From assembly GCF_032444005.1 (NCBI RefSeq), contig NC_091285.1, positions 482,360,001-482,424,000 of the forward strand: a stretch of DNA of 64,000 nt, written 5' to 3'. Positions 10,264 through 41,528 of this stretch are shown here, piece after piece. Position 1 is the first letter of the stretch. Each line of letters opens with the position of its first letter. Below the pieces are notes generated by a model that was not told where the DNA came from, did no database searches, and saw only the letters and a program-made list of their open reading frames with translations. The stretch comes from Ranitomeya imitator. Its lineage: Eukaryota. The translations under genes were made by a program, and so were the position numbers.

Positions 10264-11857
10264 CAGTGCCTACAAGTAGTATTCAACCCCCTGCAGATTT
10301 AGCAGATTTACACATTTGGAATTAACTTGGCATTGTGACATTTGGACTGTACATCAGCCTGGAAGTGTGAAATGCACTGCAGCAAAAAAGAATGTTATTT
10401 CTTTGTTTATTTTTTTTTTAAATTGTGAAAAGTCTTTTCAGAGGGTCATTTATTATTCAACCCCTCAACCCACCAGAATTCTGTTTGGTTCCCCTAAAGT
10501 ATTAAGAAGTAGTTCAGGCACAAAGAACAATGAGCTTCACATGTTTGGATTAATTATCTCTTTTTCCAGCCTTTTCTGACTATTTAAGACCCTCCCCAAA
10601 CTTGTGAACAGCACTCATACATGGTCAACATGGGAAAGACAAAGGAGCATTCCAAGGCCATCAGAGACAAGATCGTGGAGGGTCACAAGGCTGGCAAGGG
10701 GTACAAAACCCTTTCCAAGGAGTTGGGCCTACTTGTCTCCACTGTAGGGAGCATCATCCAGAAGTGGAAGGCTTATGGAACTACTGTTAGCCTTCCACGG
10801 CCTGGACAGCCTTTGAAAGTTTCCTCCCGTGCCGAGGCCAGGCTTGTCCGAAGAGTCAAGGCTAACCCAAGGACAACAAGGAAGGAGCTCCAGGAAGATC
10901 TCATGGCAGTGGGGACATTGGTTTCAGTCAATACCATAAGTAACGTACTCCACCACAATGGTCTCCGTTCCAGACGAGCCCGTAAGGTACCTTTACTTTC
11001 AAAGCGTCATGTCAAGGCTCGTCTACAGTTTGCTCATGATCACTTGGAGGACTCTGAGACTGGCTGGTTCAAGGTTCTCTGGTCTGATGAGACCAAGATC
11101 GAGATCTTTGGTGCCAACCACACACGTGACGTTTGGAGACTGGATGGCACTGCATACGACCCCAAGAATACCATCCCTACAGTCAAGCATGGTGGTGGCA
11201 GCATCATGCTGTGGGGCTGTTTCTCAGCCAAGGGGCTTGGCCATCTGGTCCGCATCCATGGGAAGATGGATAGCACGGCCTACCTGGAGATTTTGGCCAA
11301 GAACCTCCGCTCCTCCATCAAGGATCTTAAGATGGGTCGTCATTTCATCTTCCAACAAGACAACGACCCAAAGCACACAGCCAAGAAAACCAAGGCCTGG
11401 TTCAAGAGGCAAAAAATCAAGGTGTTGCAGTGGCCTAGTCAGTCTCCTGACCTTAACCCAATTGAAAACTTGTGGAAGGAGCTCAAGATTAAAGTCCACA
11501 TGAGACACCCAAAGAACCTAGATAACGTGGAGAAGATCTGCATGGAGGAGTGGGCCAAGATAACTCCAGAGACCTGTGGCGGCCTGATCAGGTCTTATAA
11601 AAGACGATTATTAGCTGTAATTGCAAACAAAGGTTATTCCACAAAATATTAAACCTAGGGGTTGAATAATAATTGACCCACACTTTTATGTTTAAAATTT
11701 ATAAAAATTTGACTGAGCAACAAAACATTTTGGTTTGTAAGATTTATGCATCTGTTAATAAATCCTGCTCTTGTTTGAAGTTTGAAGGCTCTAACTTATT
11801 TGCATCTTATTAAACCTGCTAAATCTGCAGGGGGTTGAATACTACTTGTAGGCACTG
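10264..11857 (+). mobile_element. Full-length Tc1 element, IR/DR type
   Basis: TA TSD at 10262-10263 and 11858-11859; 42-bp perfect outer TIR CAGTGCCTACAAGTAGTATTCAACCCCCTGCAGATTTAGCAG; inner TTATTATTCAACCCCT repeats near 10430 and 11660; the empty site is visible in the sister hAT copy near 18750. Confidence 0.97.
10630..11652 (+). CDS. Intact Tc1 transposase, DD34E (340 aa from MGKTKE; ORF open from 10621)
   Basis: Paired-like HTH N-terminus, GRP-like motif (PGQP), WSDETK, QQDNDPKH, SPDLNPIENLW; 34 residues counted between the second D and E; no stops. Confidence 0.95.
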   Translation: MGKTKEHSKAIRDKIVEGHKAGKGYKTLSKELGLLVSTVGSIIQKWKAYGTTVSLPRPGQPLKVSSRAEARLVRRVKANPRTTRKELQEDLMAVGTLVSVNTISNVLHHNGLRSRRARKVPLLSKRHVKARLQFAHDHLEDSETGWFKVLWSDETKIEIFGANHTRDVWRLDGTAYDPKNTIPTVKHGGGSIMLWGCFSAKGLGHLVRIHGKMDSTAYLEILAKNLRSSIKDLKMGRHFIFQQDNDPKHTAKKTKAWFKRQKIKVLQWPSQSPDLNPIENLWKELKIKVHMRHPKNLDNVEKICMEEWAKITPETCGGLIRSYKRRLLAVIANKGYSTKY

Positions 11858-11984: not shown

Positions 11985-13770
11985 AAAGTAGCTCCCCTCA
12001 TAGAATATAATGTAGCCTTCCTCATAGAATATAATGCAGACCCTTCATAGGGTATAGTACAGCACCCCGCATAATATAATGCAACCCCCTCATAAGGTAT
12101 AATGCAGCCCCCCCCAGAATATAATGAGGCACCCTCAAATGGCATAATGAAGCCCCCCTCATATAGTATAATTGCAGCCCCTCCACAAAATATAATGTAG
12201 CCCCCTCAGAGTATAAGGCAACCCCCTCCTAAGGCAGCTCCCATAGAATATGGGAATAAAAGAGGTCTGGATACACATGATGAGAGCATTATACTGCCTC
12301 TGTACAAATCCCTAGTTAGAACGCACATGGAGTACTGTGTCCAGTTTTGGGCACCGGTGCTCAGGAAGGATATAATGGAACTAGAGGGAGTACAAAGGAG
12401 GGCAACAAAATTAATAAAGGGGATGGGAAATCTACAATACCCAGATAGATTAGCGAAATTAGGATTATTTAGTCTAGAAAAAAGACGACTGAGGGGTGAT
12501 CTAATAACCATGTATAAGTATATAAGGGGACAATACAAATATCTCACTGAGGATCTGTTTATACCAAGGAAGGTGACGGGCACAAGGGGGCATTCTTTGC
12601 ATCTTGAGGAGAGAAGGTTTTTCCACCAACATAGAAGAGGATTCTTTACTGTTAGGGCAGTGAGAATCTGGAATTGCTTGCCTGAGGAGGTGGTGATGGC
12701 GAACTCAGTCGAGGGGTTCAAGAGAGGCCTGGATGTCTTCCTGGAGCAGAACAATATTGTATCATACAATTATTAGGTTCTGTAGAAGGACGTAGATCTG
12801 GGTATTTATTATGATGGAATATAGGCTGAACTGGATGGACAAATGTCTTTTTTTGGCCTTACTAACTATGTTACTATGTTACTATGTTACTAATATACTG
12901 GAGCCCCCTCATAGGGCATAATGCAGCTCCCCTCATATAGTATGATGTAGCCCCCTGAGAGAATAATGCAGTCCCCTTCATATAATATAATGCAGCCTCT
13001 CCACAGAATATAATGTAGCCCCCTCAGAGTATAATGCAACCCCCTCATAAGGCAGCCCCCCATAGAATATACTGTAGCCCCCTCATAGGGCATAATGTAG
13101 CTCCCCTCATATAGTATGATGTAGCCCCCTAAGAGAATAATGCAGCCCCCCACAGAATTATAATGTAGCCCCCTTATAGGGTATAATGAAGCCCCCCTGA
13201 AAGGGAATAATGCAGCCCCCCTCCACCACCATCATTGTTCTCCCCCTCCACCCCCATCATTGTACTCATCACCACCTACATCATTGCCTCCTCGCCACCA
13301 CCATTGTCCTTTCCACCACTACGATCTTTGTCCTTTACACCACAACCATCATTGCTTTCTCCCCCACCACCCCATCATTGCCCATTCCAACACCTCCATC
13401 ATTGCCTCCCCCCACCACCATCATCATTGTCCTTTCCATCACAACCATCATTGCCTTCTCCCCCACCACCCCATCATTGCCCATTCCATCACCTCCATCA
13501 TTGCCTCCCCCACCACCATCATCATTGTCATTTCCACCACAACCATCATTGCCTTCTCCCCCACCACCCCATCATTGCCCATTCCACCACCTCCATCATT
13601 GCCTCCCCACCACCATCATCATTGCCTCCCCCACAACCATCATCATTGACTCCCCCACCACCATCATCATTGCCTCCCCCACCACCATCATCATTGTCTC
13701 CCCCACCACCATCATCATTGCCTCCCCCCACCACCATCATTGCTTTCTCCCCCATCACCCACATCACTGC
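11985..13770. repeat. Minisatellite blocks inside the hAT element (about 24-bp CAGCCCCCTCATAGAATATAATG units, then CCATCATCATTGCCTCCCCCA units)
   Basis: Visible tandem periodicity, interrupted by the CR1 at 12252-12891. Confidence 0.85.
12252..12891 (+). mobile_element. 5'-truncated CR1 LINE (ORF2 C-terminus, 3' UTR, microsatellite tail)
   Basis: ORF 12327-12776 has CR1 motifs EYCVQFWAP, LEGVQRRATK, LEKRRLRGDLI and TRGHSL; (CTATGTTA)n tail at 12866-12891; possible AATAT TSD. Confidence 0.93.
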
Positions 13771-14608
13771 CAATCTCTAATATCTCCAATAAACATACAA
13801 CACCACTATAACACATACAGCACCATACACAGACAACACCGCACCACTCTCTCACACACACAAAGCACCACACCACACTACATACACACACAGCCGCACA
13901 CACGCAGGCAGGCAGGCAGGCAGAGAGACACACACACAGCACCCACACACCTCTCCGCACGTTCCCAGCAGCCGCAGCACATCCCGGCAGCTTCCTCTCT
14001 GAAATAGCGGCGCTGAATGATGACGTCATCCAGCCACGCTGAGTCAGACAGGAAGTGCCGGGCAGGAAGGAGGACAGCGTCAGATCCCTGCAACTCCGCT
14101 CCGTTCCCAAGCTGCAGGGATCACAATCAGGGTTCGCCACTCTTTAGGAGCCCACATCTGGGGCCCTGATTCACCAGCATCAGCGTGCAGTGTTAGCCTC
14201 AGCCTGCAGCTAACGCTGCCCACTATTAAAGTGAAAAGACAATTCACTCTTCTCCATGCCCATGGGGGCGTGGGGAAGCGTGAATATTAATTTCTCTTTA
14301 GCAGCGGGGACAGGTTCCTGTCTCCAGCTGCTGCTCTCTGGCATCGGGAGGGCCCCCCTTGACTCAGGGGCCCCATAGCAGCTGGGTGTGCTGCTATTAG
14401 CAACATGCCACTGGCTGGGGGGCCCCTCGAGCAGTGAGGGCCCTAGGCAGCTACTGGCTAATATGCTAGCAGGTGTCAGTGCCTGGGCCCACCGGAGAAT
14501 TCTCCGGTGGGCCAGTACAACCCTGGACTCCATTGTAAATCCATAACTTAGAAGATTGTTGATTTTTCCTCCTTTCTTCTCTCCTAAAATTTAGCAGATG
14601 CCCTGTTA

Positions 14609-14901: not shown

Positions 14902-16043
14902 TTACATAATGCTGATAAATGATCATTTATTTATAACAAATTTGCTCAATGAAAAACGAGTGAAATCTCACTGATTTTACAATCCCTGCTCATGTTTACA
15001 TTTACTTTGAAAATTAAATGAAAAATTTTACTCGATGTTGATAATCGTTATTTGTAAAATGCTCTTAAACTAAACATGGTGACAGAAGTGATAATGTTCG
15101 TAATTTGTGGGGCTGTGCTCTTTGAATCTGAAATAATCACCTTCAGTCATAGATTAGGAATAATACAATGTATGCAGTAGTGTGAAAATGTGTTAGTCAG
15201 GTATAGAAATAATGCTGCAATGTAAGAATGCTGTGAAAAATAGAAGTGTTAATAGTTTATTTTTTATCAATGAACAAAATTTCAAAGTGAATGAACAAAA
15301 GGAAAATGTAAATCAAATAAATGTCTGATGTGACCACCCTTTGTCTTCAAATAGAATCGGCTCTTCTAGGTACACGTGCACACAACATTTGAAAAAACTC
15401 AGAAGAGACGTTGTTGCACAACATCTTGGAGACTAACCATATATCTTCTGTGGCTGTACGCCGGTAGAAAGCCTTCTGTCTCTTTATGTAATCCCAGACA
15501 AACTTGATGATGTTGAGATCAGAGCTCTGTGGGAACCATAGCATAACTTCCAGGACTCCTTGTTCTTCTTTACACAGAAAATAATTCTAATTGACAGTGA
15601 CTGTATGTCTGGAGTTATTGTCCAGATACCTCCTTGTAGGTAATACATGGTGGATAAGTATCTGCCCGTATTTCTCAGCATTTAGACACCATTTAGCCAG
15701 ACCAAATTCCTAACTCCAATTGTTGAAATGTAACCCCAAACTTGCAAGGAACCTCCACCATGCCTCACTGTTACCTGAATATGCATGTAAAGAAGCTGCG
15801 GAGACACCATCACGTGTTTCTCGACGCAAGCAGTGAATAGCCAGGCCTTTCCCCGGGAAGGAACAACCACGGGAAGGGCAGCATCCTATGAAGGAAAGCC
15901 ACCTATGCCAAGCATGGTATCCATTCACAGACAGCTGTTTCGGGGTAAAAACAGATGTTGGATGTTTTGGTCTCCCCGAGGCCAATCATCTGTGCCTTTA
16001 TAGCCTTTTTACTAGGCACTGCTCCTAATAGCCAGATTCCTAC

Positions 16044-16088
16044 TCCACACTGATGAGGGGCAAAAACCCCGAAACAGCTGTCTGTGGA
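16044..16088 (+). ncRNA. Type I hammerhead ribozyme, copy 1
   Basis: TCCACA CTGATGA GGGG caaaaa CCCC GAAA CAGCTG TC / TGTGGA: 6-bp helix I, canonical core, 4-bp helix II, short palindromic helix III (ACAGCTGT); predicted GUC cleavage after 16082. Confidence 0.93.
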
Positions 16089-16397
16089 TGGATACCATGC
16101 TTGGCATAGGTGGCTTTCCTTCATAGGATGCTGCCCTTCCCGTGGTTGTTCCTTCCCGGGGAAAGGCCTGGCTATTCACTGCTTGCGTCGAGAAACACGT
16201 GATGGTGTCTCCGCAGCTTCTTTACATGCATCTGCCTATTTCCCATAAGGGATGGGGGCAGTGTTCTGGAATCACTTACGTTGAGAAACACGTGATGGTG
16301 TCTCCGCGGTGTTGGATGTTTTGGTCTCCCCAAGGCCAATCATCTGTGCCTTTATAGCCTTTTTACTAGGCACTGCTCCTAATAGCCAGATTCCTAC

Positions 16398-16442
16398 TCC
16401 ACACTGATGAGGGGCAAAAACCCCGAAACAGCTGTCTGTGGA
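16398..16442 (+). ncRNA. Type I hammerhead ribozyme, copy 2
   Basis: Identical motif; predicted cleavage after 16436. Confidence 0.93.
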
Positions 16443-16750
16443 TGGATACCATGCTTGGCATAGGTGGCTTTCCTTCATAGGATGCTGCCCTTCCCGTGGT
16501 TGTTCCTTCCTGGGGAAAGGCCTGGCTATTCACTGCTTGCGTCGAGAAACATGTGATGGTGTCTCCGCAGCTTCTTTACATGCATCTGCATATTTCCCAC
16601 AAGGGATGGGGGCAGTGTTCTGGAATCGCTGCGTTGAGAAACACGTGATGGTGTCTCCGTGGTGTTGGATGTTTTGGTCTCCCCGAGGCCAATCATCTGT
16701 GCCTTTATAGCCTTTTTACTAGGCACTGCTCCTAATAGCCAGATTCCTAC

Positions 16751-16795
16751 TCCACACTGATGAGGGGCAAAAACCCCGAAACAGCTGTCTGTGGA
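16751..16795 (+). ncRNA. Type I hammerhead ribozyme, copy 3
   Basis: Identical motif; predicted cleavage after 16789. Confidence 0.93.
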
Positions 16796-17103
16796 TGGAT
16801 ACCATGCTTGGCATAGGTGGCTTTCCTTCATAGGATGCTGCCCTTCCCGTGGTTGTTCCTTCCCGGGGAAAGGCCTGGCTATTCACTGCTTGCGTCGAGA
16901 AACACGTGATGGTGTCTCCGCAGCTTCTTTACATGCATCTGCATATTTCCCATAAGGGATGGGGGCAGTGTTCTGGAATCACTGCGTTGAGAAACACGTG
17001 ATGGTGTCTCCGCGGTGTTGGATGTTTTGGTCTCCCCGAGGCCAATCATCTGTGCCTTTATAGCCTTTTTACTAGGCACTGCTCCTAATAGCCAGATTCC
17101 TAC

Positions 17104-17148
17104 TCCACACTGATGAGGGGCAAAAACCCCAAAACAGCTGTCTGTGGA
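17104..17148 (+). ncRNA. Type I hammerhead ribozyme, copy 4, with core mutation GAAA to AAAA
   Basis: CCCC AAAA CAGCTGTC at 17127-17142; G12 changed to A at 17131. Confidence 0.85.
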
Positions 17149-17456
17149 TGGATACCATGCTTGGCATAGGTGGCTTTCCTTCATAGGATGCTGCCCTTCC
17201 CGTGGTTGTTCCTTCCTGGGGAAAGGCCTGGCTATTCACTGCTTGCGTCGAGAAACATGTGATGGTGTCTCCGCAGCTTCTTTACATGCATCTGCATATT
17301 TCCCACAAGGGATGGGGGCAGTGTTCTGGAATCACTGCGTTGAGAAACACATGATGGTGTCTCCGCGGTGTTGGATGTTTTGGTCTCCCCGAGGCCAATC
17401 ATCTGTGCCTTTATAGCCTTTTTACTAGGCACTGCTCCTAATAGCCAGATTCCTAC

Positions 17457-17501
17457 TCCACACTGATGAGGGGCAAAAACCCCGAAACAGCTGTCTGTGG
17501 A
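17457..17501 (+). ncRNA. Type I hammerhead ribozyme, copy 5
   Basis: Identical canonical motif; predicted cleavage after 17495. Confidence 0.93.
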
Positions 17502-19742
17502 TGGATACCATGCTTGGCATAGGTGGCTTTCCTTCATAGGATGCTGCCCTTCCCGTGGTTGTTCCTTCCCGGGGAAAGGCCTGGCTATTCACTGCTTGCG
17601 TCGAGAAACACGTGATGGTGTCTCCGCAGCTTCTTTACATGCATCTGCATATTTCCCATAAGGGATGGGGGCAGTGTTCTGGAATCACTGCGTTGAGAAA
17701 CACGTGATGGTGTCTCTGCGGTGTTGGATGTTTTGGTCTCCCCGAGGCCAATCATCTGTGCCTTTATATCACTGTTACCTGAAGACACTCATTACTATAC
17801 TGCTCTCCTTCAGAAAAGAAACTGCCTTCCGTAACAGACAAATAATTTATATTTTAGTTCATCACCTCCTGCTATTTTTCTATATCCCAGTTACTATGTT
17901 TTCATGCATCGATGAGTCATTTGGCCTTGTTTCTTTGTCAAAGGTAAGGTTTTTTGGCTGAAATTCTTCCATGATGACTACTTCTTGTCAGACTTCTATG
18001 AACGGTAGATAGGTGTAGCTGGGTCCACTGGTTGCTGCCAGTTCTGAGCTGATGGCATTGCTGTACATCTTCCGATTTCGAAAGAGAGTAAGCATGATGT
18101 ATCTGTCATCTGCTGCACTACGTTTTCCTTGACCACTGCATCTATAGTTCTCAGTGTTGCCCATTTCTTTATGCTTATTCAAATGAGCTAAAACAGCAGA
18201 TAATGAAACCACAGTCTTCTTTGAATTCTTTGCATGGAAGATACATTGCTGATGCAGTATAACTACCTTGTGTCTTATTGCTGCCCTAAGTCTTGCCATG
18301 ATGTATGACCGGTGATATGAAACTGTCTTCCACAACTTCACTTTTGTACCAGAGTTTGGCTGCTCGGTCACTGTTTTAAGCCCTCTATCCAGTTGTTTCT
18401 GTATTAGATAATGTCAACCTACATATGAAAATGGTTATCATTATCACCTGTTAGCTATAATTGGTTACTCATATACCTGACAATAATCTTACAAAAATTC
18501 CTGACTGTGTGCAAGTGTACATGCAAGAATTGATGCTGTTTTGAAAGCAAAAAGTTCTCACACCAAATATTGATTTGATTTAGATTTCTATTTTGTTCAT
18601 TCACTCTGCATTTTGTTAATTGATAAAAACAAACTATTAACACTTCTATTTTTGAAAGCGTTCTTACTTTGCAGCATTTACTCTACACCAGCGTCGGACT
18701 GGAGCACCTTGGGCCCACCAGAGAAAATCATTCTTGGGGCCCACTATGTAGCTACATAGAAATAGATACAAGACCAACAATTGTGCGGTAAAAAGCGCTA
18801 ATATCAGGGTATAATATAAGGTAGTTCACGTCTTAATAATGTAGCAAGGGTTGGGGTAGCCCCCTCACAGAATATAATGTAGCCCCCTCATAAAATATAA
18901 TGCAGTCCCCTCTCATAGAATATAATGCAGCACCCCACAAAATATAATGCAACCCTCTCAGGTATGACACAGTCCCCACCATAGAATATAATGTAGCACC
19001 CCATAGGGTATAATGCAGCCCCCCCCCATATAGTGTAATGCCACCCACCACAGAATATAATGTAGTCCCCTGAGAGAATGCAGTTCCACCACAGAATATA
19101 ATGCAGCCCCCCCATAGAGTATACTGTAGCCCCCTCATATAATATGATGTAGCCCCCATAATATTATGTAGTCCCCTGAGAGAATAATGCAGCCCCACCA
19201 CAGAATATAATGCAGCCCCCCATAGAGTATACTGTAACCCCTCATAATATAATGTAGTACCTTGAGTATAATGCAGTCCCCCCACAGAATATAATGTAGC
19301 CCCCCAGGGCCGTATTTAGAGTTTCTGCTGCCCTAGGCACTTTTAGCTCTGCCTTCCCTTTTGGTGAGTATGACACTATCGGCAGTGACTTTGGCAAGAA
19401 TCGCTGATGTGAAAGTCGCCTTTTGCAGCAGATCGGGCAGTTTTTCTGCATCTGCCGCGTAACGGATCACTTACAGCAACACTGCGTTCGGCCTCATTCA
19501 TTCCCTATGAGATTTGCGGCACTTGCCGTGATCTGGCAAATGAGGTACCATACCTCCCAACTTTTGAAGGGAAGGAGGTATTAAGTTTGCGGCGCGCGTA
19601 GTGCGCCGCGGCAAATTTTAGGCCACGCCTCTGACCAGACCCATTTCACAACTAGTCACACCCATATCCACGTCCCAACCACAGCCATTTAGCACTGCTG
19701 ATCACACTGTTTTATATACAATAATTATAAGCAAACAAAAAT

Positions 19743-20240
19743 ATGGCCACACATGATGTTCCATCCTGTATAATGGCCACACATGATGCTCAATACTGTA
19801 TAACGGCCACCACACATGTTCCATACTGTATAATGACCGCACATGATGCTCCATACTGTATAACGGCCACACATGATGCTCCACACTATATAATGGCCAC
19901 ACATGATGCTCCATACTGTATAATGGCCACACATGATGCTCCATACTGTATAACGGCCACACATGATGCTCCATACTGTATAATGTCCATTGGCCACACA
20001 TGATGCTCCATACTGTATAACGGCCACACATCATGCTCCATACTGTATAATGGCCACACATGATGCTCCATACTGTATAATGGCCACACATGATGCTCCA
20101 TACTGTATAACGGCCACACATGATGCTCCATACTGTATAATGGCCACACATGATGCTCCATACTGTATAATGTCCATTGGCCACACATGATGCTCCATAC
20201 TGTATAACGGCCACACATGATGCTCAATACTGTATAATGA
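19743..20240. repeat. 30-bp minisatellite (GGCCACACATGATGCTCCATACTGTATAAT)
   Basis: About 16 near-identical tandem copies. Confidence 0.92.
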
Positions 20241-37889: not shown

Positions 37890-39100
37890 CATCGGCATTA
37901 CCGTTTTGTTTGCCGGGTCTGTAGTGGATGGTGAAGTCCAGAGGTTGTAGGGCTAAACTCCACCGCAGTAATCTGGCGTTGTCTCCGGAGACCCGATTAA
38001 GCCAGACTAGGGGATTATGGTCCGTTAGGAGGGAAAACTGTCATCCATACAAATATGGTTGTAACTTTTTGAGTGCCCATACTATTGCCAGGCACTCCTT
38101 CTCGATGGCCGCATAGCTCACTTCATGGGGCAGTAGTTTCCGACTCAGGTAAGCTACCGGGTGTTCTTGGCCGTCCGGCCCGACTTGGCTTAGTACTGCC
38201 CCCAATCCAAACATAGAAGCGTCTGTGTGAACAGGAAACATTTAGTTGGATCGGGTGCGGCCAATACAGGGGTATTGGTGAGGGCGTCCTTTAGCTGTCG
38301 GAAGGCTTCCTCACACTCTGGGGTCCAGGTTACCTGGCGGGGTTGGTTCTTACGGGTCAGATCAGTGAGGGGCTTGGCCACGCTGCTGTAATTGGGAACG
38401 AATTTCCTGTAATACCCCGCTGTCCCTAGAAACGCCATGACCTGGGATTTAGTGCGTGGGGTGGGCCATTTGGCTATGGCCTCAATCTTGGCTGGTTCTG
38501 GTCTCTGTTTCCCACTTCCCACCCAATGCCCTAAATACTGAACCTCTGCTTTGCCCACGTGACACTTGTTTGGGTTCAGGGTGATTCCAGCCTTGTGTAT
38601 TCTGTCTAATACTGTCTCTAGGTGATTTAGATGCTCTTCCCATGTCGCGCTGTAGATGGCGATGTCATCCAGGTAGGCACACGCATAGTCCTGGAGACCA
38701 TCCAGAAGCCGGTCAGCCAGCCTCTGGAAGGTCGCCGGGGCAGTCTTCATCCCGAATGGCATAACTCGAAACTGGAATAAGCCGAACGGGGTGACAAATG
38801 CCGACTTGGGAATAGCATCAGGACTAAGGGGAATCTGCCAGTAGCCTTTGCATAGATAGATGGTGGTCAAATACTTTGCCCCTGCCAGCCAGTCTAACAA
38901 GTCATCCACACGCGGCATGGGATACGCATCCGTCACTGTTTTCTCATTGAGCTTACGATAGTCTACACAAAACCGTGTAGTTCCATCCTTCTTGGGCACT
39001 AACACTACGGGGGATGCCCAGGGACTATCTGACTCTTCAATGACCCCTAAACGCAACATCTCTTGTATCTCTTGTCGCATCCCTTCTCGTACAGACTCAG
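37890..39100 (-). pseudogene. Reverse transcriptase and RNase H, frameshifted
   Basis: [59 protein letters not shown]. Confidence 0.92.
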
Positions 39101-39119
39101 CGACGCGGAAGAGGGGTTG

Positions 39120-41528
39120 TCACAGGGGGGTCTGATCCTGGGTCTCAACCTTGTGTTGTGCCAGGTGACTGTACCTGGGTTTCCCTGAAAACATCCTCTG
39201 TCGCTGCCTCAACAACTCCTCCGCCTGCTGTCTCTCCCGGGGACCTAAGTCTTCACCCCAGTGTACCTGGTCCCATGTTTTAGACTGAGTCCTCTCCCCT
39301 AAGACATCAGGCAAGGGAAGTCCGGCTAAATCCTCTGCTTCAGGTGCACAGATGGCCACTACCTCTTCAGGGCGCTCCCGATAGGGCTTCAGCATATTCA
39401 CGTGGAACATGCGGATAACCCTGGGGTCGTCACAATCGGCGACATTATAGGTGGTGTCGGCTATTTTCCCCACTACCTGGTAGGGCCCCTGCCATGCAGC
39501 TTGGAACTTGTTCTGCCTAGTGGGCTCTAACACCAGGACCTTCTGCCCTATTTCCAAGGTGTGCTCTCTGGCCCTCCGATCGTACCATACGCGTTGGCGC
39601 CGCTGGGCCACCTGCATGTTCCCACGTACAGCCTGGGTTAGCTCCTGTAGGCGGTCCCGGAATTCCAGCACATAGGGTACAATAGGTACCCCTTCTATGA
39701 TGCCCTCCCCTTCCCAGTGTTCTAGCACTAAGTCTAGGGGTCCCCTTACCCGTCTCCCGTATACCAGTTCGAATGGGGAGAACCCCGTGGATTCTTGGGG
39801 CACCTCTCGATAGGCAAACAGTAGGTGAGGCAAGAATTTCTCCCAGTCCCTGTAGGTCCTGGTAAAAGTCCCAATGAGTTGTTTTAACATCCCGTTAAAG
39901 CATTCACACACCCCATTGATTTGCGGGTGGTACGGGGCGCTTCTAATGGACTTTACGCCGCACAGCTTCCACAGTTGGTTGGTCACCTCTGCTGTAAACT
40001 GGGTACCCTGGTCCGAGATAATTTCCCAGGGAAATCCTACCCGTGAGAAAACCTGGAGAAGGGCGGCCGCCACCGTCTCTGCCAGTATGTTAGGTAACGC
40101 AACCGCCTCTGGATACCGTGTGGCATAATCTACCACTGTAAATATATACCTTTTCCCTGACGGACTGGGTTTGGCTAACGGCCCTATCAGATCGACCGCT
40201 ACTCGGCTAAATGGTTCCTCCACAATGGGGAGGAGGCGTAATTTGGCCTTGCATCGATCTCCCCTCTTGCCAATGCGCTGGCAACTGTCACAGGTCTGGC
40301 AGTATTGACGAACATCATAGGTTACCCCCGGCCAAAAGAAGTTTTGTGTCAGACGATGCCTGGTACGACTGACGCCGAAGTGCCCGGCCAAGGGTATGTC
40401 ATGAGAGATTCGCAGTAACTCCTGCCTATATTTCTTGGGAACTACCCGCTGTTGTTTTATAGTGGGGCTTGTCCCTGTGTGGTGCTGCTCTGTGATCCGG
40501 TAGAGGAGTCCCTGCTTCCATATAAACTGTTCCCCTTCCAGTACCCCTCTCCTGTCCTGTGCCTTCCAACGATATCCCTCCAATGAAGGATACTCAAGTA
40601 ACTCCCTCTTAAATTCATCTGGGGTGGCCCAAGAAATGTGTCTGGCTATGGGAATACGTGTAGGGCTGGGATGTCTTACCTGGGCCTCCTCTGAGTGTGA
40701 TTCCGCCTCCGCAGCTCGAGCTTGTCTCCGGGTGGTCACAGGATATGTCTCAGCCAGAGGGGCAACCGAGAAGGCAGACAACATGGGCCCCAAGTCATTT
40801 CCCAGAAAAACGTCTGCAGGCAAATCCTCCATCAAGCTGACCTCAACAAGGCCATCCCCAACTCCCCAGTTCAGGTGAATCCTGGCAGTGGGTAGTCGAT
40901 GTATGGCTCCCCCTGCTACACGGACTGCCACTGTTCGGTCCGTCTTCTCTTGGTCCCAGACGAGATGAGGCTTCACAAGGGTCAAAGTTGCTCCGGAATC
41001 TCTTAGTCCCTGCATGCGTTTCCCATTAACCCACACGAGCTGTCGATGCTGTTGTTGATTATCTGCCCGGGCTGCCTGCACGGAGCCTACATCATGCAGC
41101 ACTTCCTCCATGTCTTCCACCCCTTGGTTAGTTGTAGCCCCCAATGCCAGGTCAGCTTCGCCTTGGTAGCAGGGTACAGCGGCCCGGCGGAAGGTAGCTG
41201 TTCCCGCCTTTGGCCACTGGGTATGCTGAGTCCGGTTGGGACATTGTCTTTGCAGGTGGCCCAGCTGATGGCAGGTGTGGCATCGCGCCCCAGGGGAACT
41301 GTGGTAGGCCGGGTTTCTAGCTGGTCCCCCTACAATCTTCGGTGGTTTGGGGCTTTCCAGGTCCATGTGCGGACCCCTATTGACCATCTTTGATCCGGAC
41401 AACTGAGGCCTCCTGGCGTCATGATGTTCATCGGCCAGACGAGCGGCTTCCTCAAGAGTCAATGGCCGCCTGTCCCGAAGCCATTTCTGTGTCTCGGGGT
41501 TTAGTCCATTAAAGAATCGTTCTAACAA
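39120..41528 (-). pseudogene. Gag C-terminus (CCHC) - protease - integrase polyprotein segment
   Basis: CHTCHQLGHLQRQC knuckle, RDSGAT protease, HDIPLAGHFG/CDSC zinc motif, VDLIGP...ISDQGTQF...NGVCE integrase core, followed by the start of RT. Confidence 0.92.

What the first reader, a model, noticed from the sequence alone, without database searches (positions are those of the whole stretch)
15780..17768. Hammerhead-ribozyme tandem array (frog retrozyme) preserved as a discrete, TSD-bounded insertion
Seen: five 353/354-bp units, each carrying a type I hammerhead (CUGAUGA core, GAAA, GUC site). Four are canonical. The array is bounded by an exact 15-bp duplication of host Tc1 sequence, so it arrived as one event. 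Neither end coincides with a cleavage site, and the sequence runs through the sites repeatedly. Established: newt satellite 2 and metazoan non-LTR retrozymes are non-coding monomers of roughly 170-400 nt with type I hammerheads that self-cleave and circularise. Inference: this multimer is a reverse-transcribed copy of a circular 353-nt RNA (rolling-circle RT), or of an uncleaved multimer. It may be an undescribed anuran retrozyme family.
Basis: partly seen in the sequence, partly recalled or inferred. Interest (0 to 1): 0.92.

Follow-up and report, generated by a model that had tools for sequence, protein, structure and literature searches.

The report
Frog hammerhead retrozyme array, Penelope-style insertion
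This is a genuine young insertion of a small non-coding mobile repeat that carries self-cleaving hammerhead RNA motifs. The kind is already described in frogs and salamanders, so it is a clean example that shows how it was pasted in, not a discovery.

Summary
The insert 15780-17768 lies between an exact 15-bp duplication. Removing it plus one duplicate restores a Tc1 transposase reading frame. It is not five plain units. It has one orphan base, a 166-nt inverted partial unit (15781-15946), a 9-nt filler, then 5.1 direct 353-bp units (15956-17768).

There are five type I hammerheads, four with an intact core. The fifth has GAAA changed to AAAA at 17131. Helix III is only a palindrome, ACAGCUGU. 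Two motifs co-fold into the classic double hammerhead.

A tandem array, a 5' inverted truncated copy and a long duplication together match the published insertion signature of Penelope-like elements, which nick and extend both DNA strands. I therefore read this as a non-autonomous non-LTR retrozyme multimer laid down in one reverse-transcription event that passed six uncleaved ribozyme sites.

Whether the template was a circle or a linear multimer is unresolved. Units 2 and 4 share three changes that the others lack, which a monomeric circle alone does not explain. Expression is unproven.

Frog retrozymes linked to Penelope elements are already published. This scan also holds 67 notes on such elements elsewhere in this genome. 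Interest is low to moderate.

The parts
15765..15779 (.). Left copy of the 15-bp target-site duplication (TCACTGTTACCTGAA)
   Evidence: Exact direct repeat D3. It lies inside the Tc1 transposase frame.
15780..15780 (.). Single orphan base (T) between the duplication and the insert. It matches neither the unit nor the target.
15781..15946 (-). Inverted 5'-truncated partial unit (unit positions 337 of one unit to 149 of the next, counted from the cut site). It contains the 3' half of a hammerhead and its cut site on the minus strand.
   Evidence: Inverted repeats I1-I5, 96-99% complementary. BLAST 98.2% over 166 nt. Alignment. Unit positions.
15947..15955 (.). 9-nt filler (AAAAACAGA) at the inversion joint, which lies inside the helix II hairpin of the ribozyme
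   Evidence: Contigs from other loci continue with unit sequence on both sides of it (loose ends at 15947 and 15956).
15956..17768 (+). Direct tandem array of 5.1 units of 353/354 bp. It starts at unit position 227 and ends at unit position 273 (...GCCTTTATA).
   Evidence: TRF; the repeat finder; BLAST
16032..16103 (+). Hammerhead 1 (type I), intact core, cut after 16082
16386..16457 (+). Hammerhead 2, intact core, cut after 16436
16739..16810 (+). Hammerhead 3, intact core, cut after 16789
17092..17163 (+). Hammerhead 4, core damaged: the first G of the GAAA box is A at 17131 (CpG to CpA). Expected to be inactive.
   Evidence: Not found by Rfam or by the descriptor.
17445..17516 (+). Hammerhead 5, intact core, cut after 17495
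17769..17783 (.). Right copy of the 15-bp target-site duplication
15347..18550 (-). Decayed Tc1-type transposon that hosts the insertion (approximate extent, from transposase fragments)
   Evidence: tblastn with the in-window Tc1 transposase

Best explanation
A non-autonomous, non-coding hammerhead retrozyme (353-nt unit) was copied from a multimeric RNA, or a rolling-circle equivalent, into a decayed Tc1 element by target-primed reverse transcription.

The target was cut on both strands 15 bp apart. The bottom-strand 3' end primed at unit position 273 and copied about 5.1 units, giving the direct array. The top-strand 3' end primed at unit position 149 and copied 166 nt, giving the inverted cap. 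The two cDNAs were joined with a 9-nt filler, and gap repair produced the 15-bp duplication.

A Penelope-like element is the most likely source of the enzyme. The ribozymes are the weak-helix-III kind that cleave as pairs. In a tandem transcript, neighbouring motifs would form a double hammerhead and release 353-nt monomers.

Shown: the anatomy, the duplication, the restored host frame, the motif and its predicted dimer fold, and the very high abundance of the family.

Inferred: the RNA intermediate, the Penelope-type enzyme, self-cleavage and circles.
For: - Exact 15-bp duplication and a Tc1 frame restored across the empty site.
- Tandem array plus an adjacent inverted 5'-truncated copy. This is the layout described for Penelope-like insertions (PMC8557442). 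A Penelope-like enzyme has been shown in vitro to cut and extend both strands, to start reverse transcription internally, and to prefer unprocessed RNA (PMC11167929).
- If one RNA served both primers, only 77 nt (unit 150-226) are missing between the two cDNAs, and the copied span is 2055 nt across six ribozyme sites. That is the twin-priming pattern.
- No poly(A) at either end.
- Complete hammerhead core: helix I 6 bp, helix II 4 bp, helix III 2 bp with the palindromic loop AGCU. This matches the published 'canonical metazoan' type I motif (PMC4209133, PMC7229834).
- The minimum-energy co-fold of two motifs is the double hammerhead, -43.5 against 2 x -19.0 kcal/mol.
- The unit folds better than shuffles, z -3.7.
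- No coding signal: ORFs are 101 aa or shorter and have no relatives.
- Family abundance: 5136 contigs laid in one DNA run. Summed depth is about 1e6, against about 5e3 for the Tc1 flank and about 8 for low-copy flank. The unit is also present in runs of at least five coded organisms.
- Contigs from other loci leave the unit within 1-2 nt of both of this insert's outer ends (table 7).
- Non-LTR retrozymes related to Penelope pseudo-LTRs are published for frogs (10.64898/2026.07.22.740005).
Against: - No Penelope-like element, and no homology of the unit to a Penelope pseudo-LTR, could be tested here. None lies in the window, and the genome could not be searched.
- The target is not the AT-rich ATT site reported for the one enzyme studied (PMC11167929).
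- Rfam gathering scores are not reached.
- No run is on record as RNA. In the runs guessed to be RNA, the unit-to-Tc1 depth ratio (about 70-80) is no higher than in DNA (about 200), so transcription is not shown.
- Eight of nine frog retrozyme dimers tested in vitro by others did not cleave (10.64898/2026.07.22.740005).
Confidence: 0.75

Rival explanations
1. One reading: rolling-circle reverse transcription of a monomeric 353-nt circular RNA produced all the units at once.
For: The copy runs through six ribozyme sites without a break, and neither outer end is at a cut site. Circular retrozyme RNAs of 170-400 nt are documented in animals (PMC7229834).
Against: - A monomeric circle predicts identical units. 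Units 2 and 4 share three linked derived changes (16511/16552/16600 and 17217/17258/17306) that are absent from the other units, from the inverted cap, and from over 90% of genome-wide depth at the two of these sites that the laid stretch covered. An extra event is therefore needed: a duplication, a gene conversion or a dimeric circle.
- In vitro, a Penelope-like enzyme used unprocessed multimer RNA (PMC11167929).
- No circle has been shown here.
Confidence: 0.2
2. A shorter insert (for example 3 units plus the cap) arrived by reverse transcription. It then grew in place by unequal crossing-over of a 706-bp two-unit block, or was patched by gene conversion.
For: The shared triple change in units 2 and 4 is what a two-unit duplication or a conversion tract of about 90-250 bp would leave. 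The duplication at the ends would survive. Tandem arrays do this, and local amplification is the model proposed in 10.64898/2026.07.22.740005.
Against: The partner A unit of a duplicated A-B block carries no shared derived change, although the B unit carries three. This is about a 5% chance at equal rates, on small numbers. Most other differences are private CpG transitions, consistent with simple decay after one event.
Confidence: 0.3
3. A LINE (L1-like) enzyme, not a Penelope-like element, mobilised the RNA. Classical twin priming produced the inverted 5' segment.
For: 15-bp duplications and 5' inversions are typical of L1 twin priming (established knowledge).
Against: There is no poly(A) or A-rich tail at either end. 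The tandem multimer layout and the hammerhead content match Penelope-like elements (PMC8557442, PMC4209133). The target is not an L1-type TTTT/A site.
Confidence: 0.08
4. DNA-level origin: a piece of satellite DNA or an extrachromosomal DNA circle was captured at a staggered break.
For: The family is extremely abundant, so fragments would be available.
Against: A precise 15-bp duplication, an inverted cap whose outer end is a recurrent terminus, and a near-shared right terminus in other loci all fit primed synthesis better than random capture.
Confidence: 0.04

Closest known systems
Metazoan non-LTR retrozymes (Cervera & de la Pena 2020, PMC7229834; frog families in Li, Clavereau & Pollet 2026, bioRxiv 10.64898/2026.07.22.740005)
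   Same: Non-coding tandem unit within 170-400 nt. A type I hammerhead in each unit. No LTR. Duplication longer than 4 bp. Amphibian-style weak helix III that needs a dimer. Very high copy number.
   Different: RNA, circles and cleavage are not shown for this family. GC is 51% rather than below 50%. None of the nine published Xenopus test elements matches it by primer comparison, so it may be an unnamed family or from another frog.
Penelope-like element insertions (pseudo-LTR tandems with an inverted 5'-truncated copy; PMC8557442, PMC11167929)
   Same: Partial tandem plus an adjacent inverted truncated copy within one duplication. Hammerhead in the repeat. Evidence for internal, recurrent start points.
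   Different: No RT/GIY-YIG gene, so it is non-autonomous. The hammerhead is the canonical form (helix II 4 bp, helix III present), not the minimal Penelope variant with a 7-8 bp helix II (PMC4209133). The 30-40-bp 'tail' could not be assessed.
Newt/salamander satellite 2 and axolotl HHR_Amex repeats (330-350 bp)
   Same: Unit length. Type I hammerhead with helix I 6 bp, helix II 4 bp and a tiny palindromic helix III. Acts as a double hammerhead.
   Different: No sequence comparison was made, as I held no satellite 2 sequence. Here the copy is a dispersed insertion flanked by a duplication, not a long satellite block.
Rfam Hammerhead_HH9 (RF02275) / hammerhead clan CL00010
   Same: Core and helix layout align over the full model (positions 1-77).
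   Different: 24.3 bits against a gathering score of 52, so it is not a member of that family by Rfam's rule. HH9 is the conserved amniote intronic motif.

Membership tests
Hammerhead ribozyme, type I | Conserved core CUGANGA ... GAAA ... UH cut site, with helices I, II and III in the type I order | tested here: met
   A descriptor with pairing rules finds 4 hits in the array, 0 elsewhere and 0 in 200 shuffles. Alignment to a hammerhead model over all positions. The fifth copy fails through G>A at 17131.
Hammerhead ribozyme, type I | Reaches the curated Rfam gathering score of a hammerhead family | tested here: not met
   No hit at gathering. Best is HH9 at 24.3 bits against 52. The short helix III costs score. 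I file it as a hammerhead by motif, not as a member of any Rfam family.
Hammerhead ribozyme, type I | Self-cleavage after GUC | not testable with these tools
   Only thermodynamic support: the double hammerhead is the minimum-energy dimer. Others found 8 of 9 frog dimers inactive in vitro (10.64898/2026.07.22.740005).
Non-LTR retrozyme | Tandem non-coding unit of about 170-400 nt with a type I hammerhead per unit, without LTR | tested here: met
   353-bp unit x 5.1. ORFs of 101 aa or shorter without relatives. No terminal direct repeats other than the units. PBS and PPT were not looked for.
Non-LTR retrozyme | Mobile: dispersed copies with target-site duplications longer than 4 bp | tested here: met
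   15-bp duplication and restored host frame. Thousands of contigs, with junctions to unrelated flanks, in other runs. Scan notes list further duplication-flanked copies of a 353-bp family (unchecked).
Non-LTR retrozyme | Expressed as linear and circular RNA of unit length | tested here: inconclusive
   No run on record as RNA. All runs are contigs, so ends and circles cannot be seen. There is no enrichment over Tc1 in the runs guessed to be RNA.
Penelope-like-element-type insertion (non-autonomous) | Partial tandem with an adjacent inverted 5'-truncated copy inside one duplication | tested here: met
   Feature as defined in PMC8557442.
Penelope-like-element-type insertion (non-autonomous) | Sequence relationship of the unit to the pseudo-LTR or 3' end of an autonomous RT/GIY-YIG element in the same genome | not testable with these tools
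   No Penelope-like ORF in the window. The only RT is Ty3/Gypsy. The genome cannot be searched. Scan notes report Penelope-like elements elsewhere in this genome (unchecked).
Penelope-like-element-type insertion (non-autonomous) | 30-40-bp 'tail' extension / defined internal start site of reverse transcription | tested here: inconclusive
   Other-locus contigs leave the unit at 16000 and 16001, next to this insert's right end (equivalent to 16002). Others leave at 15782, next to its left end at 15781. These are only a few of 208 loose ends, so selection is possible.

The most novel reading that the evidence does not exclude
This insertion may record two things not yet documented for animal retrozymes.

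1. The mobilising enzyme may start reverse transcription at two fixed internal sites of the unit, each just 3' of a CUUUA motif (unit positions 149 and 273), one on each cleaved DNA strand. Retrozymes would then have defined ends despite being 'endless' tandem or circular RNAs.

2. The template may have had a two-unit (706-nt) period, for example a dimeric circular RNA left by pairwise double-hammerhead cleavage. The A-B-A-B-A pattern of the units would then be a direct print of it.
Probability: 0.15. Interest if true: 0.5.

Novelty: new member of a known kind. Interest (0 to 1): 0.25.

Why it matters
The published frog work leaves the mobilisation mechanism of non-LTR retrozymes open and proposes local amplification by unequal crossing-over. 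This copy shows that a multimer can go in as one primed event with the two-strand priming scar typical of Penelope-like elements. The template had also passed through six ribozyme sites uncut or re-ligated. It is therefore a useful, well-preserved specimen for a genome-wide census of retrozyme termini and for picking constructs for cleavage and circle assays. It does not change what is known about the class.

Tried and rejected
- Rfam at gathering threshold: nothing.
- A weak H/ACA snoRNA hit at 17755-17789 (E 3.6) is chance.
- Expression: both run searches returned only contig-level runs, none on record as RNA. The single read-laying run could not show ends, strand or circles. No contig bridged the left junction, so presence or absence of an empty allele could not be judged.
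- Paralogous empty site by DNA: no other copy of the host Tc1 family lies in the window. The test was replaced by the protein-level frame test.
- Other copies by protein look-up of unit ORFs: not on record, and no homologues.
- Exact-pattern scans of metagenome contigs for the ribozyme: empty.
- Comparison with the 18 primers of the nine published Xenopus retrozymes: best match 15 of 23, which is chance.
- The Rana temporaria tandem-repeat paper mentions no such unit.
- A-B-A-B-A as proof of a 706-bp period: downgraded, because only 1 of 10 placements of two B units alternates (p about 0.1).
- Depth ratio as a copy number (about 1e5 units): kept only as an order-of-magnitude hint, since the tool warns that summed contig depth is not a copy number.
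Full report
**What is there**

Tandem Repeats Finder reports one array of period 353 with 5.1 copies and 98% matches at 15956-17768. The repeat finder gives unit spacings of 354, 353, 353 and 353. It also finds an exact 15-bp direct repeat, TCACTGTTACCTGAA, at 15765-15779 and 17769-17783.

Bases 15781-15946 are the reverse complement of the units, 96-99% over 166-171 nt and 98.2% by BLAST. Base 15780 fits nothing. Bases 15947-15955 (AAAAACAGA) are filler.

The insert is therefore: orphan base, inverted partial unit, filler, then 5.1 direct units.

**Unit coordinates**

Counting each unit from the base after the ribozyme cut:
- The inverted piece runs from position 149 back through a cut site to position 337 of the preceding unit.
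- The direct array starts at position 227.
- The direct array ends at position 273.

No other copy of the unit lies in the 64-kb window.

**The insertion is real**

I removed the insert and one copy of the duplication and translated the minus strand. A Tc1 transposase frame then runs straight across the joint (…QVTVRHGGGSLQVWG…). It aligns to residues 175-214 of the intact Tc1 transposase encoded at 10621-11652 of the same window (E 3e-8). A second fragment aligns further on.

The host is a decayed Tc1 of a different family from that intact copy, since there is no DNA-level match.

**The ribozyme**

Each unit carries CUGAUGA, then a 4-bp helix II (GGGG/CCCC with loop CAAAAA), then GAAA, then ACAGCUGUC. 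The flanks form a 6-bp helix I (UCCACA/UGUGGA) that can extend by four more pairs past an internal loop.

A descriptor with pairing rules finds the motif four times in the array, nowhere else on either strand, and never in 200 shuffled windows. The fifth copy has G>A at 17131 in the GAAA box, a CpG transition.

Rfam calls nothing at gathering score. The best match, Hammerhead_HH9, scores 24.3 bits against a cut-off of 52. This is a hammerhead by motif, not a member of a curated Rfam family.

Helix III is only two pairs with the palindromic loop AGCU. Alone, the 72-nt motif does not fold into a hammerhead better than chance (z -1.5). Two motifs co-fold, as the minimum-energy structure, into the classic double hammerhead: an 8-bp intermolecular helix III and helices I formed in trans (-43.5 against 2 x -19.0 kcal/mol).

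This is the 'canonical metazoan' type I architecture. It depends on dimers, as described for amphibians (PMC4209133; PMC7229834). The whole unit folds more stably than shuffles (z -3.7 linear, -2.4 to -3.4 circular). It holds only short ORFs without relatives.

**How it got there**

The layout is a tandem array, a 5'-truncated inverted copy next to it and one long duplication around both. This is the insertion architecture described for Penelope-like elements (PMC8557442). In vitro, a Penelope-like enzyme cuts and extends both target strands, starts reverse transcription at internal sites of the RNA, and uses unprocessed multi-copy RNA (PMC11167929).

Read that way:
- The right end (…GCCTTTATA) is where the bottom strand primed.
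- The left end (…CTTTACATGCAT, inverted) is where the top strand primed.
- The two cDNAs met at the filler.

If both used one RNA, only 77 nt (positions 150-226) are missing between them. The copied span is 2055 nt across six ribozyme sites.

Neither end has an A-run, which argues against an L1-type enzyme. The identity of the enzyme is inferred. No Penelope-like gene lies in the window, and the only reverse transcriptase is Ty3/Gypsy. I could not search the genome.

**Circle or multimer?**

The copy passes every cut site, so the template was either uncleaved or re-ligated.

Units 2 and 4 share three linked changes, at 16511/16552/16600 and 17217/17258/17306. These are absent from units 1, 3 and 5 and from the inverted piece. 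Two of the three sites fall in the stretch I laid reads on. There the B letters did not reach 10% of the genome-wide depth in any run.

A monomeric circle predicts identical units. Something more is therefore needed:
- a two-unit template period (a dimeric circle, or a donor array with that pattern),
- a later 706-bp duplication, or
- a short gene-conversion tract.

The alternation itself is weak evidence, because one of ten placements of two B units alternates. A later duplication is mildly disfavoured, because the partner A unit shares no change while B shares three (about 5% at equal rates, on small numbers).

The remaining ten or so differences are private. Half are CpG transitions, so the insert is young, at about 0.5% divergence.

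**Other copies and expression**

The unit's sampled words occur in runs of at least five coded organisms.

In the largest DNA run, 5136 contigs were laid on the stretch. Summed depth over the unit was about 1e6, against about 5e3 over the Tc1 flank and about 8 over low-copy flank. The tool warns that this is not a copy number, but the family is plainly very abundant.

Contigs from other loci continue with unit sequence exactly where this insert breaks (15781, 15947, 15956). This confirms that those breakpoints are peculiar to this locus.

A few contigs leave the unit for unrelated sequence at 16000 and 16001 and at 15782. These lie within 1-2 nt of this insert's two outer ends, which hints at preferred start sites. 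However, 188 loose ends were not shown.

No run is on record as RNA, and all are contigs. In the two runs guessed to be RNA, the unit-to-Tc1 ratio is no higher than in DNA. Transcription, ends and circles therefore remain untested.

**What is known**

- Hammerhead tandem repeats in Xenopus and their link to Penelope elements were reported in 2014 (PMC4209133).
- Animal non-LTR retrozymes and their circular RNAs were described in 2020 (PMC7229834).
- A 2026 preprint finds them in all seven amphibian genomes sampled. It defines 57 Xenopus families, relates them to Penelope pseudo-LTRs, and states that the mobilisation mechanism is still open (10.64898/2026.07.22.740005).
- None of that paper's nine test elements matches this unit.
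- The scan's own index holds 67 notes on hammerhead retrozymes and 196 on Penelope elements in this same genome. They include other duplication-flanked copies with inverted caps. I did not check those notes.

**Verdict**

The feature is real and the anatomy is correct apart from the missed inversion. It is a new member, or simply another copy, of a known kind. Its value is as a clean specimen of Penelope-style, two-strand-primed insertion of a retrozyme multimer, and as a lead on fixed start sites and a possible two-unit template.

Noticed in passing
window 10621-11652 (+): Uninterrupted 343-aa Tc1/Sleeping-Beauty-like transposase ORF (HTH_SB, HTH_Tnp_Tc3_2, DDE_3). It is possibly an intact autonomous copy, and belongs to a different family from the decayed Tc1 that hosts the retrozyme.
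   Followed up: partly
window 38190-41528 (-): Ty3/Gypsy pol remnants in two ORFs: RVT_1 plus RNase H (296 aa), and integrase H2C2 plus rve plus SH3 (802 aa). There is a weak SCAN-domain hit at the N-terminus of the integrase ORF.
   Followed up: partly
window 18858-19306 and 19743-19989: Two minisatellites just downstream of the host Tc1: a 23-mer x 20 (67% matches) and a 30-mer x 8.2 (87% matches).
   Followed up: no
window 16186-16214 and 16279-16307 (and the same places in each unit): Each retrozyme unit contains an internal ~30-nt direct repeat 93 nt apart (GCGT[C/T]GAGAAACACGTGATGGTGTCTCCGC). Each copy has a CACGTG palindrome and a small local hairpin. It could be a protein-binding or promoter element.
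   Followed up: no
window 15942-15955: The inversion joint sits in the helix II hairpin of the ribozyme. GGGGTAAAAAC is 10 of 11 identical to the plus-strand hairpin GGGGCAAAAAC, so the strand switch may have happened within the hairpin.
   Followed up: partly
window 13210-14007 (+): Long ORFs rich in P/S/T/H/I arise from a low-complexity repeat. They are probably not genes.
   Followed up: no
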